Below are positions 24,001-27,000 of a DNA stretch of 64,000 bases, piece after piece. Source of the stretch: Paragordius varius (Eukaryota > Animalia > Nematomorpha). The notes under the pieces were generated by a model that was given only the letters and a program-made list of their open reading frames with translations, was not told the origin of the DNA and ran no database searches. The stretch lies in NCBI GenBank assembly GCA_964247055.1, contig OZ176053.1:3472001-3536000 (forward strand). The letters are read 5' to 3'. Numbering within the stretch: the stretch's first letter is position 1; each line of letters opens with the position of its first letter. The translations under genes and the position numbers were made by a program.

Positions 24001-27000
24001 TATACAATTAAATTTTTTCAATGGCCAAATTTTTTATCTGAATAACAACTCAAAGTAGCATATAACTTTAATTTTTGGTTTATTCAAAGGAAAATATTAC
24101 TTTTTTGATGATTTTTTAATTTTTCATATAAAATTGTCTTTAATAAATATGAATAGAATTAAATTAAATATTTACAGAAAATAATATAATAATAATTAAT
24201 ACACATACTGTTTAGTTGAAGATATATGAAAATTTCTAGATCGAAATAAGGAAAATGCAATAAATAATGAACGGTTGTATGTGTTAAATTTTGACCGCTA
24301 TAAATAATTATTGATTATTGGGGCCAAAAAATTTGAAAATAAACACCATTTTATGTTCAGAAAATGGTGTTCATGAACATGACTTTAAACGATGATGGCA
24401 CAGTTTCATTTAGTCCTACCTTGTTTGCACTAATAAGAGCAAATTTACGGATACATATGGATCAAACTGGTATTAAAATATCTCACTTTCGAATTCATCA
24501 ACCACTGAAAGAAATTAATTTCGTAATAATCTTAGACATAAAAGGAAAAAATATTTACCATGCATAAAGGCGGGTCATTTAAACACATAATGAGATGATC
24601 ACTTATATATTTTTTTTAACAAAACACATGAATTTTGCAAGTTAAAGTTTTTGACAAATATACACACTCTTGTTTGAGTCGTCATATTCGCTTTGTTACT
24701 AACGCCTAATTGTTTTTATAGCTTAATAACATGTTAGATCACAAAGAGCAGACGGTTTGTAAATTCGCGCACAAATAATATAAATATGCACATTTTAGAG
24801 TGCATTTTATGTAATGTACTTTAAAATTGTCATATTTATATAAATATATCACTAACATTGCAAGGTCATCATTAGATGATCATTGTTTTGCCGAATGCAC
24901 AAAATAATTTTTCTGTGATTTTTTTGAGTTTTTATGTTGGGTGTTTGATTGAGTTTTTTCAGTTTCATCATTGGTTTTGTTTGCGACTTCTATAACATTC
25001 TTACAATTATTTTCATCCGGTTCCTGTGAATTATTATGCATAATTTTCGATCCGCCTTAATACTTGATGTGTGTGTGCGTTGTAGAATCTGGTCAAAATG
25101 AACATGCCACTTAATAGCGATGGGACGGTAATGTTTAACGCCACCCTGTTTGCTCTTGTCCGATCCAATCTTGGAATATATATGGAGGGTAACATATGCC
25201 AAACCAAAAATACTTTTTGGAATATAGAACATATTATTTAATATTTGAAAGCTTTTATAAAGATAAAAAACGGGGCTTGCCTTATACAACATTTCCGCCA
25301 GTCTTTCTACTTTCTTTAATATTTCTTTGTTTGGCGAGTAGTGTGGAAAGTGGGAATGCCTTTGCTTATGTCATTACGATTTATGTGTTGCAAATATTTT
25401 GCATGTGTCTCACTTTTTGAATATAATCCTGTTAGATAATATACGTTTTGCACGTTATTGTTTCATATTTTTTAAGAAACTCTTTAGGCCTAATAAATAA
25501 TGTATAGAAAATTTTTTATTCCCTTATGATAGTGTTCATTTTCTTACGTTTAATTTTTAATGATTTATAAAATAATTAGGGTCATTATGCTCTTTTATAT
25601 TTAACTTTTTCAACAACTTTTTATTTTAGAAGCTCGTAAGCATTTTTAATCAAATATAGCAAAATAGTATGAAGTTAAATTAACCAAATCGTCTCCTAAA
25701 GTATATTATTTTATATTCTAATCAAACTTTGTTTTTTAATGTTTTTGACATTAAGAAAACATACATAATCTATCATCGATTTGGAACAATTTTTTAACCT
25801 TAATTTACAGTTTAGGAAATTTAAATTAAATCAACATATTTAATTTAACCATTATATATTGCGTAAACCATACAAACAAAAAAGCATTTTGTTAGCACGT
25901 AGTAACACTGTTTTATTTTTGTTTGTTATATATATGAGCTTATGATATTGCTGCTCTTAGCAAATATTAACCATGATGATGTGTATGTGTTATTATTAAT
26001 CTCGTATCCCATGTAGAAAATGATGACAATGAATATGCGCTTACGCAAAGATGGGACAGTTACGTTTCGTGGAGTGCTTTTTGCTTTGATAAGGGTGGCC
26101 CATCACCTTAATATGGAAGGTAGAGAGCAGAAAGATAGAGGCAGAGCTAACTACTGTTGCTTTTTTTAAATTAAAAATCATTTTTGCTCATATTATAAAA
26201 AGAGTATACATTTTAATTGTTGCTTATTTCACACAATAGGAGGGCAATTCGCAACACAATAATATATGGAAAAAACTACATGTTGGAAAAACAATTTATT
26301 TCGTCTTTTTTCCATACACTACTGTGTTTCAAATTGCTCAACTATAGTGTGAATGTGAAATAAACAACCATTAAAATGCATGCTGTATTTGTGTGGGTTT
26401 GAAATTTTTACAGTATGATTAAGTATACATTGCTATTTATTAATTAATTATTGCCAGATAGCATATAAAGCAAAGGGCAATATCACTTTTAACTGCTATT
26501 ATCCAATAATGATTCTCTTTGCTGAATATGGCAATTTTTAATGTAAAAAACTAGCAATGTATATTTACTCAACTGTATATATGTTAAACATAGATTTTTA
26601 AAGCATGTGTTTTATTTCTTATGGTGATGTAAGAATGAACATCTACATAAAAACTATTTCGAATCGGAAGCTTTGTATTAATTTATGAAATTATAATATA
26701 AGTATTAAATAATATTATATAAACTTTAGGGAAATGCATGAATAACAAATTTTATGTAACAAACAATTTTTGACAGATATTTTCTTATTTTTAATTTTTT
26801 TTAAATTTTTGGAATCCGATTTATTAACGATAGCGTAAAAGATATAAAGTAGGTTTTTCTTAAAAATTTTATAAATTTGACCATCTTGAATTGGATAAAA
26901 ATTTTTTTAACTTTTTTATAATCAAAATAAAACGCTATAAAAAAACACTTCCCCAAATCGATTGTTTAAACATTTCATAAAATTCTGCATGGATAAATAT

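What the first reader, a model, noticed from the sequence alone, without database searches (positions are those of the whole stretch)
24361..26119. Three-way mutually exclusive exon cluster in the Cav1 EF-hand/pre-IQ region
Seen: three paralogous exons (109, 103, 103 nt; all phase 0 to 1, so only single inclusion keeps frame) between PHRLACK and [11 protein letters not shown]. Variant 2 is canonical. Variant 1 has [11 protein letters not shown] (acidic, extra Pro, 2 aa longer). Variant 3 has [13 protein letters not shown] (strongly basic). Established: this proximal C-terminus shapes calmodulin-dependent inactivation, and the Cav2.1/2.2 exon 37a/b switch involves the preceding exon, not this one. 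Inference: a three-position switch for Ca2+/CaM feedback. Combined with the domain IV pair it gives at least six isoforms.
Basis: partly seen in the sequence, partly recalled or inferred. Interest (0 to 1): 0.86.

Follow-up and report, generated by a model that had tools for sequence, protein, structure and literature searches.

The report
Three alternative EF-hand exons in Cav1
A horsehair-worm L-type calcium channel gene carries three old, well-preserved tandem copies of the exon for the second half of its calmodulin-linked EF-hand module. They are most likely used one per messenger RNA to give three channel versions, but no RNA data could be found to prove it.

Summary
The Cav1 gene (+ strand, about 1021-31146) has three paralogous exons: v1 24361-24469 (109 nt), v2 25086-25188 (103 nt) and v3 26017-26119 (103 nt). 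Each has AG/GT splice sites and is open only in frame 0. They lie between single-copy exons 23560-23655 and 27206-27307. Only single inclusion keeps the frame; skipping, double or triple inclusion gives early stops.

All three match the same Cav1 EF-hand segment in solved structures, and v2 is the canonical form. The copies are old. Synonymous sites are saturated (pS 0.70-0.94) while pN is 0.23-0.35. No random placement of the same number of differences exceeded the observed protein identity, which one v2-v3 trial in 10,000 reached. The exons are also more GC-rich than their introns.

In DNA contigs of a related worm, v1 has no differences while its flanks carry 12. A bee and a rotifer have one copy of this exon, fused to the next.

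I found no RNA evidence, so use of v1 and v3 and any effect on calmodulin feedback are inferred. This is a new variant of a known kind: tandem mutually exclusive exons are common in Cav channels. The scan has many similar candidates in this genome, including the domain IV pair in this gene.

The parts
23560..23655 (+). Single-copy upstream exon (EF-hand 1 loop and F helix, ...PHRLACK). It ends in phase 0, with donor AAG|gtatga.
   Evidence: 84-88% identical to the bee and rotifer exons.
23656..24360 (+). Intron (705 nt) before v1.
   Evidence: GC 0.22. No similarity to the other introns of the cluster.
24361..24469 (+). Variant exon v1: 109 nt, 36 codons plus 1 nt. The loop reads [13 protein letters not shown] and there are two extra residues at the 3' end. 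Acceptor ttcag|, donor |gtatta.
   Evidence: PDB Cav1.2 E 3.9e-6. pN/pS and simulation. No differences in the organism B contigs, against 12 events in 377 nt of flank.
24470..25085 (+). Intron (616 nt) between v1 and v2.
25086..25188 (+). Variant exon v2: 103 nt, the canonical form ([22 protein letters not shown]). Acceptor tgtag|, donor |gtaaca.
   Evidence: PDB Cav1.2 E 2.7e-10, 26 of 30 aligned residues identical. 76% identical to the bee and rotifer exons.
25189..26016 (+). Intron (828 nt) between v2 and v3.
26017..26119 (+). Variant exon v3: 103 nt, basic form ([13 protein letters not shown], net +4). Acceptor atgtag|, donor |gtagag.
   Evidence: PDB Cav1.1 E 4e-4. pN/pS and simulation. 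GC 0.42 against 0.24-0.26 in the flanking introns.
26120..27205 (+). Intron (1086 nt) after v3. It contains a multi-copy MITE-like inverted repeat at 26197-26390.
   Evidence: I1, I2; depth about 1400.
27206..27307 (+). Single-copy downstream exon (start of the pre-IQ helix, [11 protein letters not shown]...). It needs one base from the preceding exon (phase 1).
   Evidence: 85-88% identical to bee and rotifer, where it is fused to the variant exon.
21427..21580 (+). Domain IV pore-loop/S6 exon, copy a. This is a companion tandem pair in the same gene and not part of this cluster.
   Evidence: Single copy in bee and rotifer.
21875..22028 (+). Domain IV pore-loop/S6 exon, copy b.

Best explanation
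This is a cluster of three tandem-duplicated, mutually exclusive exons in the single Cav1 (L-type) alpha-1 gene of a horsehair worm. The spliceosome joins the exon ending at 23655 to one of three acceptors (24361, 25086 or 26017), and that exon's donor to 27206.

Each variant is 3n+1 nt long. Any mRNA with none, two or three of them is therefore frameshifted and hits a stop within about 2-35 codons of the wrong junction. Such mRNAs would most likely be removed by nonsense-mediated decay or would give a channel cut before the IQ motif. Only single-inclusion mRNAs encode a full channel.

The three products differ only in the second helix-loop-helix of the C-terminal EF-hand module: the end of helix 3, the loop and helix 4, just before the pre-IQ helix. 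All keep the structural core (MNM, L, DGTV, F, LFAL-I/V-R). They change surface and loop residues: a canonical v2, a v1 with an acidic loop that is 2 residues longer, and a strongly basic v3.

Shown: the anatomy, the frame logic, the age of the copies and purifying selection on all three. Inferred: that all three are spliced, that the choice differs by tissue or life stage, and that it retunes how the EF-hand module passes calmodulin or voltage signals to the gate.
For: - Exon coordinates, splice sites and single open frame.
- Only single inclusion is in frame; every other combination gives early stops.
- Exactly three copies and no decayed relics.
- Each copy on its own hits the same segment of solved Cav1 chains (5GJV 1448-1477; 8EOG 1432-1463), with E 2.7e-10, 3.9e-6 and 4e-4.
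- Pairwise pS is 0.70-0.94 against pN 0.23-0.35, including the v1-v3 pair.
- With the same number of nucleotide differences placed at random, protein identity reached the observed value in 0 of 20,000 trials (v2-v1, v1-v3) and 1 in 10,000 (v2-v3). The frame stayed open in only 15-24% of trials.
- Exon GC is 0.35-0.43 against 0.22-0.29 in the introns.
- Donors and acceptors fall within the range of 13 constitutive junctions of the same gene.
- In DNA contigs of a second worm label (X5), v1 is fully covered with no differences, while 377 nt of flanking intron carry 12 events. About 3.5 would be expected in the exon, so P is about 0.03.
- Cav channels are known to be rich in tandem mutually exclusive exons, each at a different exon (PMC9741552).
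Against: - There is no RNA evidence at all. No listed run is on record as RNA, and the three guessed-RNA runs of the species put nothing real on the stretch.
- No transcript-derived or annotated protein with v1 or this worm's C-terminus exists in the protein collection.
- Cross-species support covers v1 only. v2 is covered for 38 nt, and coverage of v3 in X5 could not be established.
- Pairwise selection tests average over the whole time since duplication, so they cannot exclude a recent loss of use.
- No docking/selector RNA pairing stands out above shuffles, so strict exclusivity rests on frame logic alone.
- The functional reading (calmodulin feedback) is by analogy with vertebrate Cav1.
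Confidence: 0.7

Rival explanations
1. Only v2 makes channel protein. v1 and v3 would be former alternative exons that have recently fallen out of use. Or they would be included only to make frameshifted, unproductive transcripts as a way of regulating the gene.
For: No RNA or protein evidence for v1 or v3. v2 alone is close to the canonical sequence. Bee and rotifer manage with one exon.
Against: A poison or dead exon has no reason to keep a protein sequence. Yet v1 and v3 keep the structural core while their synonymous sites are saturated. They stay open in a 25%-GC setting where 76-85% of random equivalents acquire stops. They keep exon-like GC and exact AG/GT at homologous positions. v1 is invariant against diverged flanks in a second worm.
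Confidence: 0.15
2. The copies are used, but not in a strictly one-of-three manner. For example, a variant could act as a terminal exon with retained intron or polyadenylation. That would give a channel truncated before the IQ motif.
For: Read-through of each donor runs into a stop after 16-32 codons (ORFs 24343-24564, 25086-25238 and 26017-26166). Short C-terminal forms of Cav1 exist in vertebrates (PMC2475692, listed).
Against: The read-through tails look like intron: they are AT-rich, and in X5 the stretch right after v1 carries indels. All three donors are as good as the constitutive ones. Nothing points to polyadenylation signals being used.
Confidence: 0.08
3. The triplication is an assembly or haplotype artefact.
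For: None found.
Against: The copies are only 54-63% identical in DNA, which is far from allelic. Four DNA runs of the same species label hold 74-84% of the stretch's words, and a second label holds 44%.
Confidence: 0.01

Closest known systems
Vertebrate Cav2.1/2.2/2.3 exons e37a/e37b
   Same: Tandem-duplicated, mutually exclusive exons inside the C-terminal EF-hand module of a high-voltage-activated calcium channel. They change modulation of the channel, not the pore (PMC5818475; PMC9741552).
   Different: It is a different exon. e37 encodes EF-hand 1 and its F helix, which corresponds to the single-copy exon 23560-23655 here. It is also a different channel class (Cav2), a pair rather than a triplet, and an independent origin.
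Vertebrate CACNA1C/CACNA1D pairs (three tandem exon-substitution events per gene, PMC9741552; from my own knowledge exons 8/8a, 21/22 and 31/32) and the Drosophila Ca-alpha1D events
   Same: Same gene family (Cav1) and the same mechanism: homologous tandem exons used one at a time. PMC9741552 counts ten independent events in human and fly Cav genes, each at a different exon.
   Different: From my own knowledge, the human events lie in transmembrane segments (IS6, IIIS2, IVS3). In the papers searched I found none reported for the second EF-hand lobe. I could not find the positions of the two fly events in the text. A bee Ca-alpha1D locus has this exon once.
Rotifer (Rotaria sordida) Cav1, duplicated EF-hand 1 exon
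   Same: A Cav1 gene with tandem copies of an EF-hand-module exon (L003 15001-15096 and 15268-15363).
   Different: The duplicated exon is the preceding one, and there are two copies. The exon studied here is single there and is fused to the pre-IQ exon.
Multi-exon clusters governed by competing RNA structures (Dscam exon 6, 14-3-3 zeta, ATE1)
   Same: More than two tandem variants with one chosen per mRNA.
   Different: No docking/selector pairing above shuffled controls. Here the reading frame alone is enough to remove wrong combinations.

Membership tests
Cav1 (L-type) calcium channel alpha-1 gene | Four-domain channel with pore-loop glutamates in domains I-IV. | tested here: met
   Exons collinear with cockroach, bee and horseshoe-crab Cav1 from IS1 to IQ. 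Pore motifs TMEGW, TGEDW, TFEGW and TGEAW are present.
Cav1 (L-type) calcium channel alpha-1 gene | Closer to Cav1 than to Cav2 in the EF-hand/pre-IQ/IQ region. | tested here: met
   v2 scores E 2.7e-10 to 8.5e-9 against Cav1.2/1.3/1.1 chains and 0.009-0.025 against Cav2 chains. v1 and v3 show the same order.
Tandem mutually exclusive exon cluster | Adjacent exons that are homologous to one another. | tested here: met
   47-62% protein identity and 54-63% DNA identity in register.
Tandem mutually exclusive exon cluster | Same phases and near-equal length, each with its own splice sites. | tested here: met
   109/103/103 nt, phase 0 to 1, AG and GT at homologous positions. Site quality is like that of constitutive junctions.
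Tandem mutually exclusive exon cluster | Joint inclusion or skipping is non-productive. | tested here: met
   All non-single combinations give stops 2-35 codons past the wrong junction.
Tandem mutually exclusive exon cluster | Every copy is kept by selection. | tested here: met
   pN/pS, simulation, GC. Between worms this holds for v1 only.
Tandem mutually exclusive exon cluster | Mature mRNAs contain exactly one of the copies. | not testable with these tools
   No RNA run holds the locus. No transcript-derived protein was found.
Cav2 e37a/e37b-type switch | The alternative exon encodes EF-hand 1 and its F helix. | tested here: not met
   That exon (23560-23655) is single-copy here. The cluster is the next exon.
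Clusters controlled by a docking site and selector sequences | One intronic site that can pair with a site next to each variant. | tested here: inconclusive
   Best three-way duplex is -13.3 or -11.9 kcal/mol, reached by 4 of 20 and 18 of 20 shuffles. This used one sequence only, with no comparative data.

The most novel reading that the evidence does not exclude
A worm with a single L-type channel gene has built a three-position switch in the second EF-hand lobe. That module couples calmodulin and voltage sensing to inactivation. The worm would use the switch, together with the two-way domain IV pore switch, to make functionally distinct channels for different tissues or for the parasitic and free-living stages. 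This would be a third independent case of exon switching in the Cav EF-hand module, after vertebrate Cav2 e37a/b and the rotifer Cav1 pair. It would point to that module as a preferred tuning site.
Probability: 0.3. Interest if true: 0.6.

Novelty: new variant of a known kind. Interest (0 to 1): 0.45.

Why it matters
Natural isoforms that swap only the second EF-hand lobe, and keep its structural core, would be a ready-made probe. They could show how this little-studied half of the module contributes to calmodulin-dependent and voltage-dependent inactivation of L-type channels. The cluster also adds to the picture that Cav genes repeatedly gain diversity by tandem exon duplication, here in a neglected phylum with one Cav1 gene. 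On the practical side, standard gene finders will keep only one copy, or mis-join copies, when annotating this gene. They did mis-join copies of other Cav1 exons in the Limulus and metaclust models.

Tried and rejected
- **RNA evidence.** The look-up of sequencing runs found no RNA holder (one search was a length slip). Read laying on X5-X8 gave only DNA contigs of a second worm label and one spurious low-complexity contig from a guessed-RNA run.
- **Relatives through proteins.** The representative search with exon 1 gave only exon-sized fragments, and no hit above 63% identity extended beyond the conserved C-terminal part of the query. The v1 ORF gave no candidate. The C-terminal 133-aa ORF gave nothing. 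A region search with the Limulus protein returned 120 arthropod, rotifer and annelid Cav1s and no nematomorph. All listed proteins are about 65-68% identical to the window.
- **Scaffold alignment.** Aligning the window's exons onto the Limulus protein to make a worm-like full-length query produced a shredded alignment, which I dropped.
- **Loci.** P0001 is a 2.1 kb metagenome contig. Centruroides, Nymphon and Owenia products are not on record. The Limulus gene is too long for DNA to be returned.
- **Docking/selector RNA pairing.** The first script timed out. The rerun shows nothing above shuffles.
- **A fourth, decayed copy.** None found.
- **Assembly artefact.** Rejected, because the copies differ at 37-46% of bases.

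Full report
**What is there**

The window is AT-rich, about 26% GC. It carries a Cav1 (L-type) calcium channel alpha-1 gene on the + strand from about 1021 to 31146. Downstream lie EXOSC8/ASCC3-like exons, a phosducin-like gene on the - strand and an RTE-type retrotransposon. Earlier notes of this scan identify the genome as a horsehair worm (Nematomorpha). I did not test that myself, but nothing I saw conflicts with it.

The three exons are at the reported coordinates:
- v1, 24361-24469 (109 nt)
- v2, 25086-25188 (103 nt)
- v3, 26017-26119 (103 nt)

Each is preceded by AG and followed by GT. Each is open in one frame only. They sit between a single-copy exon ending ...PHRLACK (23560-23655, phase 0) and a single-copy exon beginning [11 protein letters not shown] (27206-27307, phase 1). 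The introns are 705, 616, 828 and 1086 nt.

**Are they more than chance?**

The repeat finder groups the three as one family, and the similarity stops at the exon borders. A permissive tblastn finds exactly these three copies in 64 kb and no decayed fourth.

Each exon alone hits the same segment of solved Cav1 chains (rabbit Cav1.1 5GJV 1448-1477; human Cav1.2 8EOG 1432-1463). The E-values are 2.7e-10 (v2), 3.9e-6 (v1) and 4e-4 (v3), and Cav2 chains score far worse. So v2 is the canonical form, and v1 and v3 are diverged Cav1-type paralogues.

All three keep MNM, L, DGTV, F and LFAL(I/V)R. They differ around these residues:
- v1 has an acidic loop (NDDG), a Pro at the start of the last helix and two extra residues at its 3' end. 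Its net charge is 0.
- v3 is net +4 with two His.

**Frame logic**

Every variant is 3n+1 nt. Joining the flanking exons with none, two or three variants gives a stop 2-35 codons after the wrong junction. Each single inclusion reads through.

**Selection**

The copies are old. In register they share 54-63% of bases. Synonymous differences are saturated (pS 0.70-0.94), while non-synonymous differences are 0.23-0.35. This holds for the v1-v3 pair too, which involves neither canonical exon.

I placed the same number of differences at random, using intron base composition:
- Mean protein identity was 8.5-11.7 of 34, against 16-21 observed.
- The observed value was reached in 0 of 20,000 trials (v2-v1, v1-v3) and in 1 of 10,000 (v2-v3).
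- The frame stayed open in only 15-24% of trials.

The exons have 35-43% GC against 22-29% in their introns. Their donors (gtatta, gtaaca, gtagag) and acceptors fall within the spread of 13 constitutive junctions of the same gene, where G at +5 is not the rule. A copy left to drift for the time needed to saturate synonymous sites would not look like this.

**Relatives**

One DNA run under a second organism label (X5) holds 44% of the stretch's words. Its contigs cover v1 completely (24104-24463 and about 24446-24589) without a difference. The 377 nt of flanking intron carry 4 substitutions upstream and 4 substitutions plus 4 indels downstream. About 3.5 events would be expected in the exon, so P is about 0.03.

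Only the first 38 nt of v2 are covered, and coverage of v3 could not be established. This support is therefore real but limited to v1.

I found no nematomorph Cav1 in the protein collections. Two outgroup loci could be read. In the bee Nomia melanderi (L002) and the rotifer Rotaria sordida (L003) the exon occurs once and is fused to the pre-IQ exon. The domain IV pore exon is also single there. So neither of these two outgroups shares the cluster. How far it extends within Ecdysozoa is open.

**RNA**

No listed run is on record as RNA. Three small runs guessed to be RNA placed nothing real on 21401-27400. Use of v1 and v3 is therefore inferred from conservation, not observed.

**Mechanism**

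The simplest reading is a frame-enforced mutually exclusive cluster. One of three acceptors is chosen, and wrong combinations are frameshifted and lost.

I tested for a docking site able to pair with a selector beside each variant, in both known layouts. The best three-way duplexes (-13.3 and -11.9 kcal/mol) were reached by 4 of 20 and 18 of 20 shuffles. There is no sign of that mechanism in this single sequence.

From established structural knowledge of Cav and Nav C-terminal domains, the exon encodes the end of helix 3, the loop and helix 4 of the EF-hand module, leading straight into the pre-IQ helix. None of the three loops has the residues of a canonical Ca2+-binding EF loop (position 12 is A, P or G). 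The variants therefore more likely change a protein-protein surface than a Ca2+ site; this is inference.

[quoted passage not shown] That makes calmodulin-dependent inactivation a reasonable target, but an untested one.

**Comparison with what is known**

Tandem mutually exclusive exons are unusually common in Cav genes. PMC9741552 counts ten independent events in human and fly, each at a different exon. The nearest analogue, Cav2 e37a/e37b, lies in the preceding exon, which encodes the EF-hand F helix (PMC5818475). That exon is single here.

In the papers I could search, I found no report of a cluster at the second EF-hand lobe of a Cav1. That literature search is limited.

The same gene has a two-copy domain IV pore exon (21427-21580 and 21875-22028). 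Another agent of this scan has already followed that pair up, with the same lack of RNA. The scan has noted many other candidate exon pairs in this genome.

**Verdict**

A working three-way mutually exclusive cluster is the best explanation (0.7). The calmodulin-feedback function and the six-isoform count are unproven. It is a new variant of a known kind, of moderate interest.

Noticed in passing
L003 15001-15096 and 15268-15363 (Rotaria sordida Cav1): The exon before the one studied here (EF-hand 1, GRIKHL...PHRxACK) is present twice in tandem in a rotifer Cav1. That is the position of the vertebrate Cav2 e37a/e37b pair, but in a Cav1 gene.
   Followed up: no
L002 46885-47088; L003 16026-16229; window 26120-27205: In bee and rotifer the variant exon and the pre-IQ exon form one fused exon. 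The phase-1 intron that makes the worm's frame-enforced exclusivity possible is absent there.
   Followed up: partly
window 1521-1535, and the exon-1 ORF hits: Most of the exon-1 fragments from other animals that I printed read through as ...VEWK-YPF. Their first intron would then start GTATCC-TT, a U12-type 5' splice site. The worm has GTAAAT there, which suggests this conserved minor intron became a U2-type intron.
   Followed up: no
window 26197-26390 and 22401-22800: A MITE-like inverted repeat lies in the intron after v3, and a second repeat lies in the intron after the domain IV pair. Both have very high contig depth (about 1400-5900) in the related worm's run.
   Followed up: no
P0059 (Limulus) and P0151 (metaclust): Predicted Cav1 proteins string two homologous copies of a IIIS5 exon (P0059) or of an IVS5/pore-loop exon (P0151) one after the other. 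These are probably mutually exclusive exons mis-joined by gene finders.
   Followed up: no
window 21544: The only difference that the related worm's contigs show inside domain IV exon copy a is synonymous (CCC to CCA, Pro).
   Followed up: partly
window 24478-24545: In run X5 two contig versions overlap here. One carries 8 differences from the window and one carries none, so the sample holds two haplotypes or two closely related worms.
   Followed up: no
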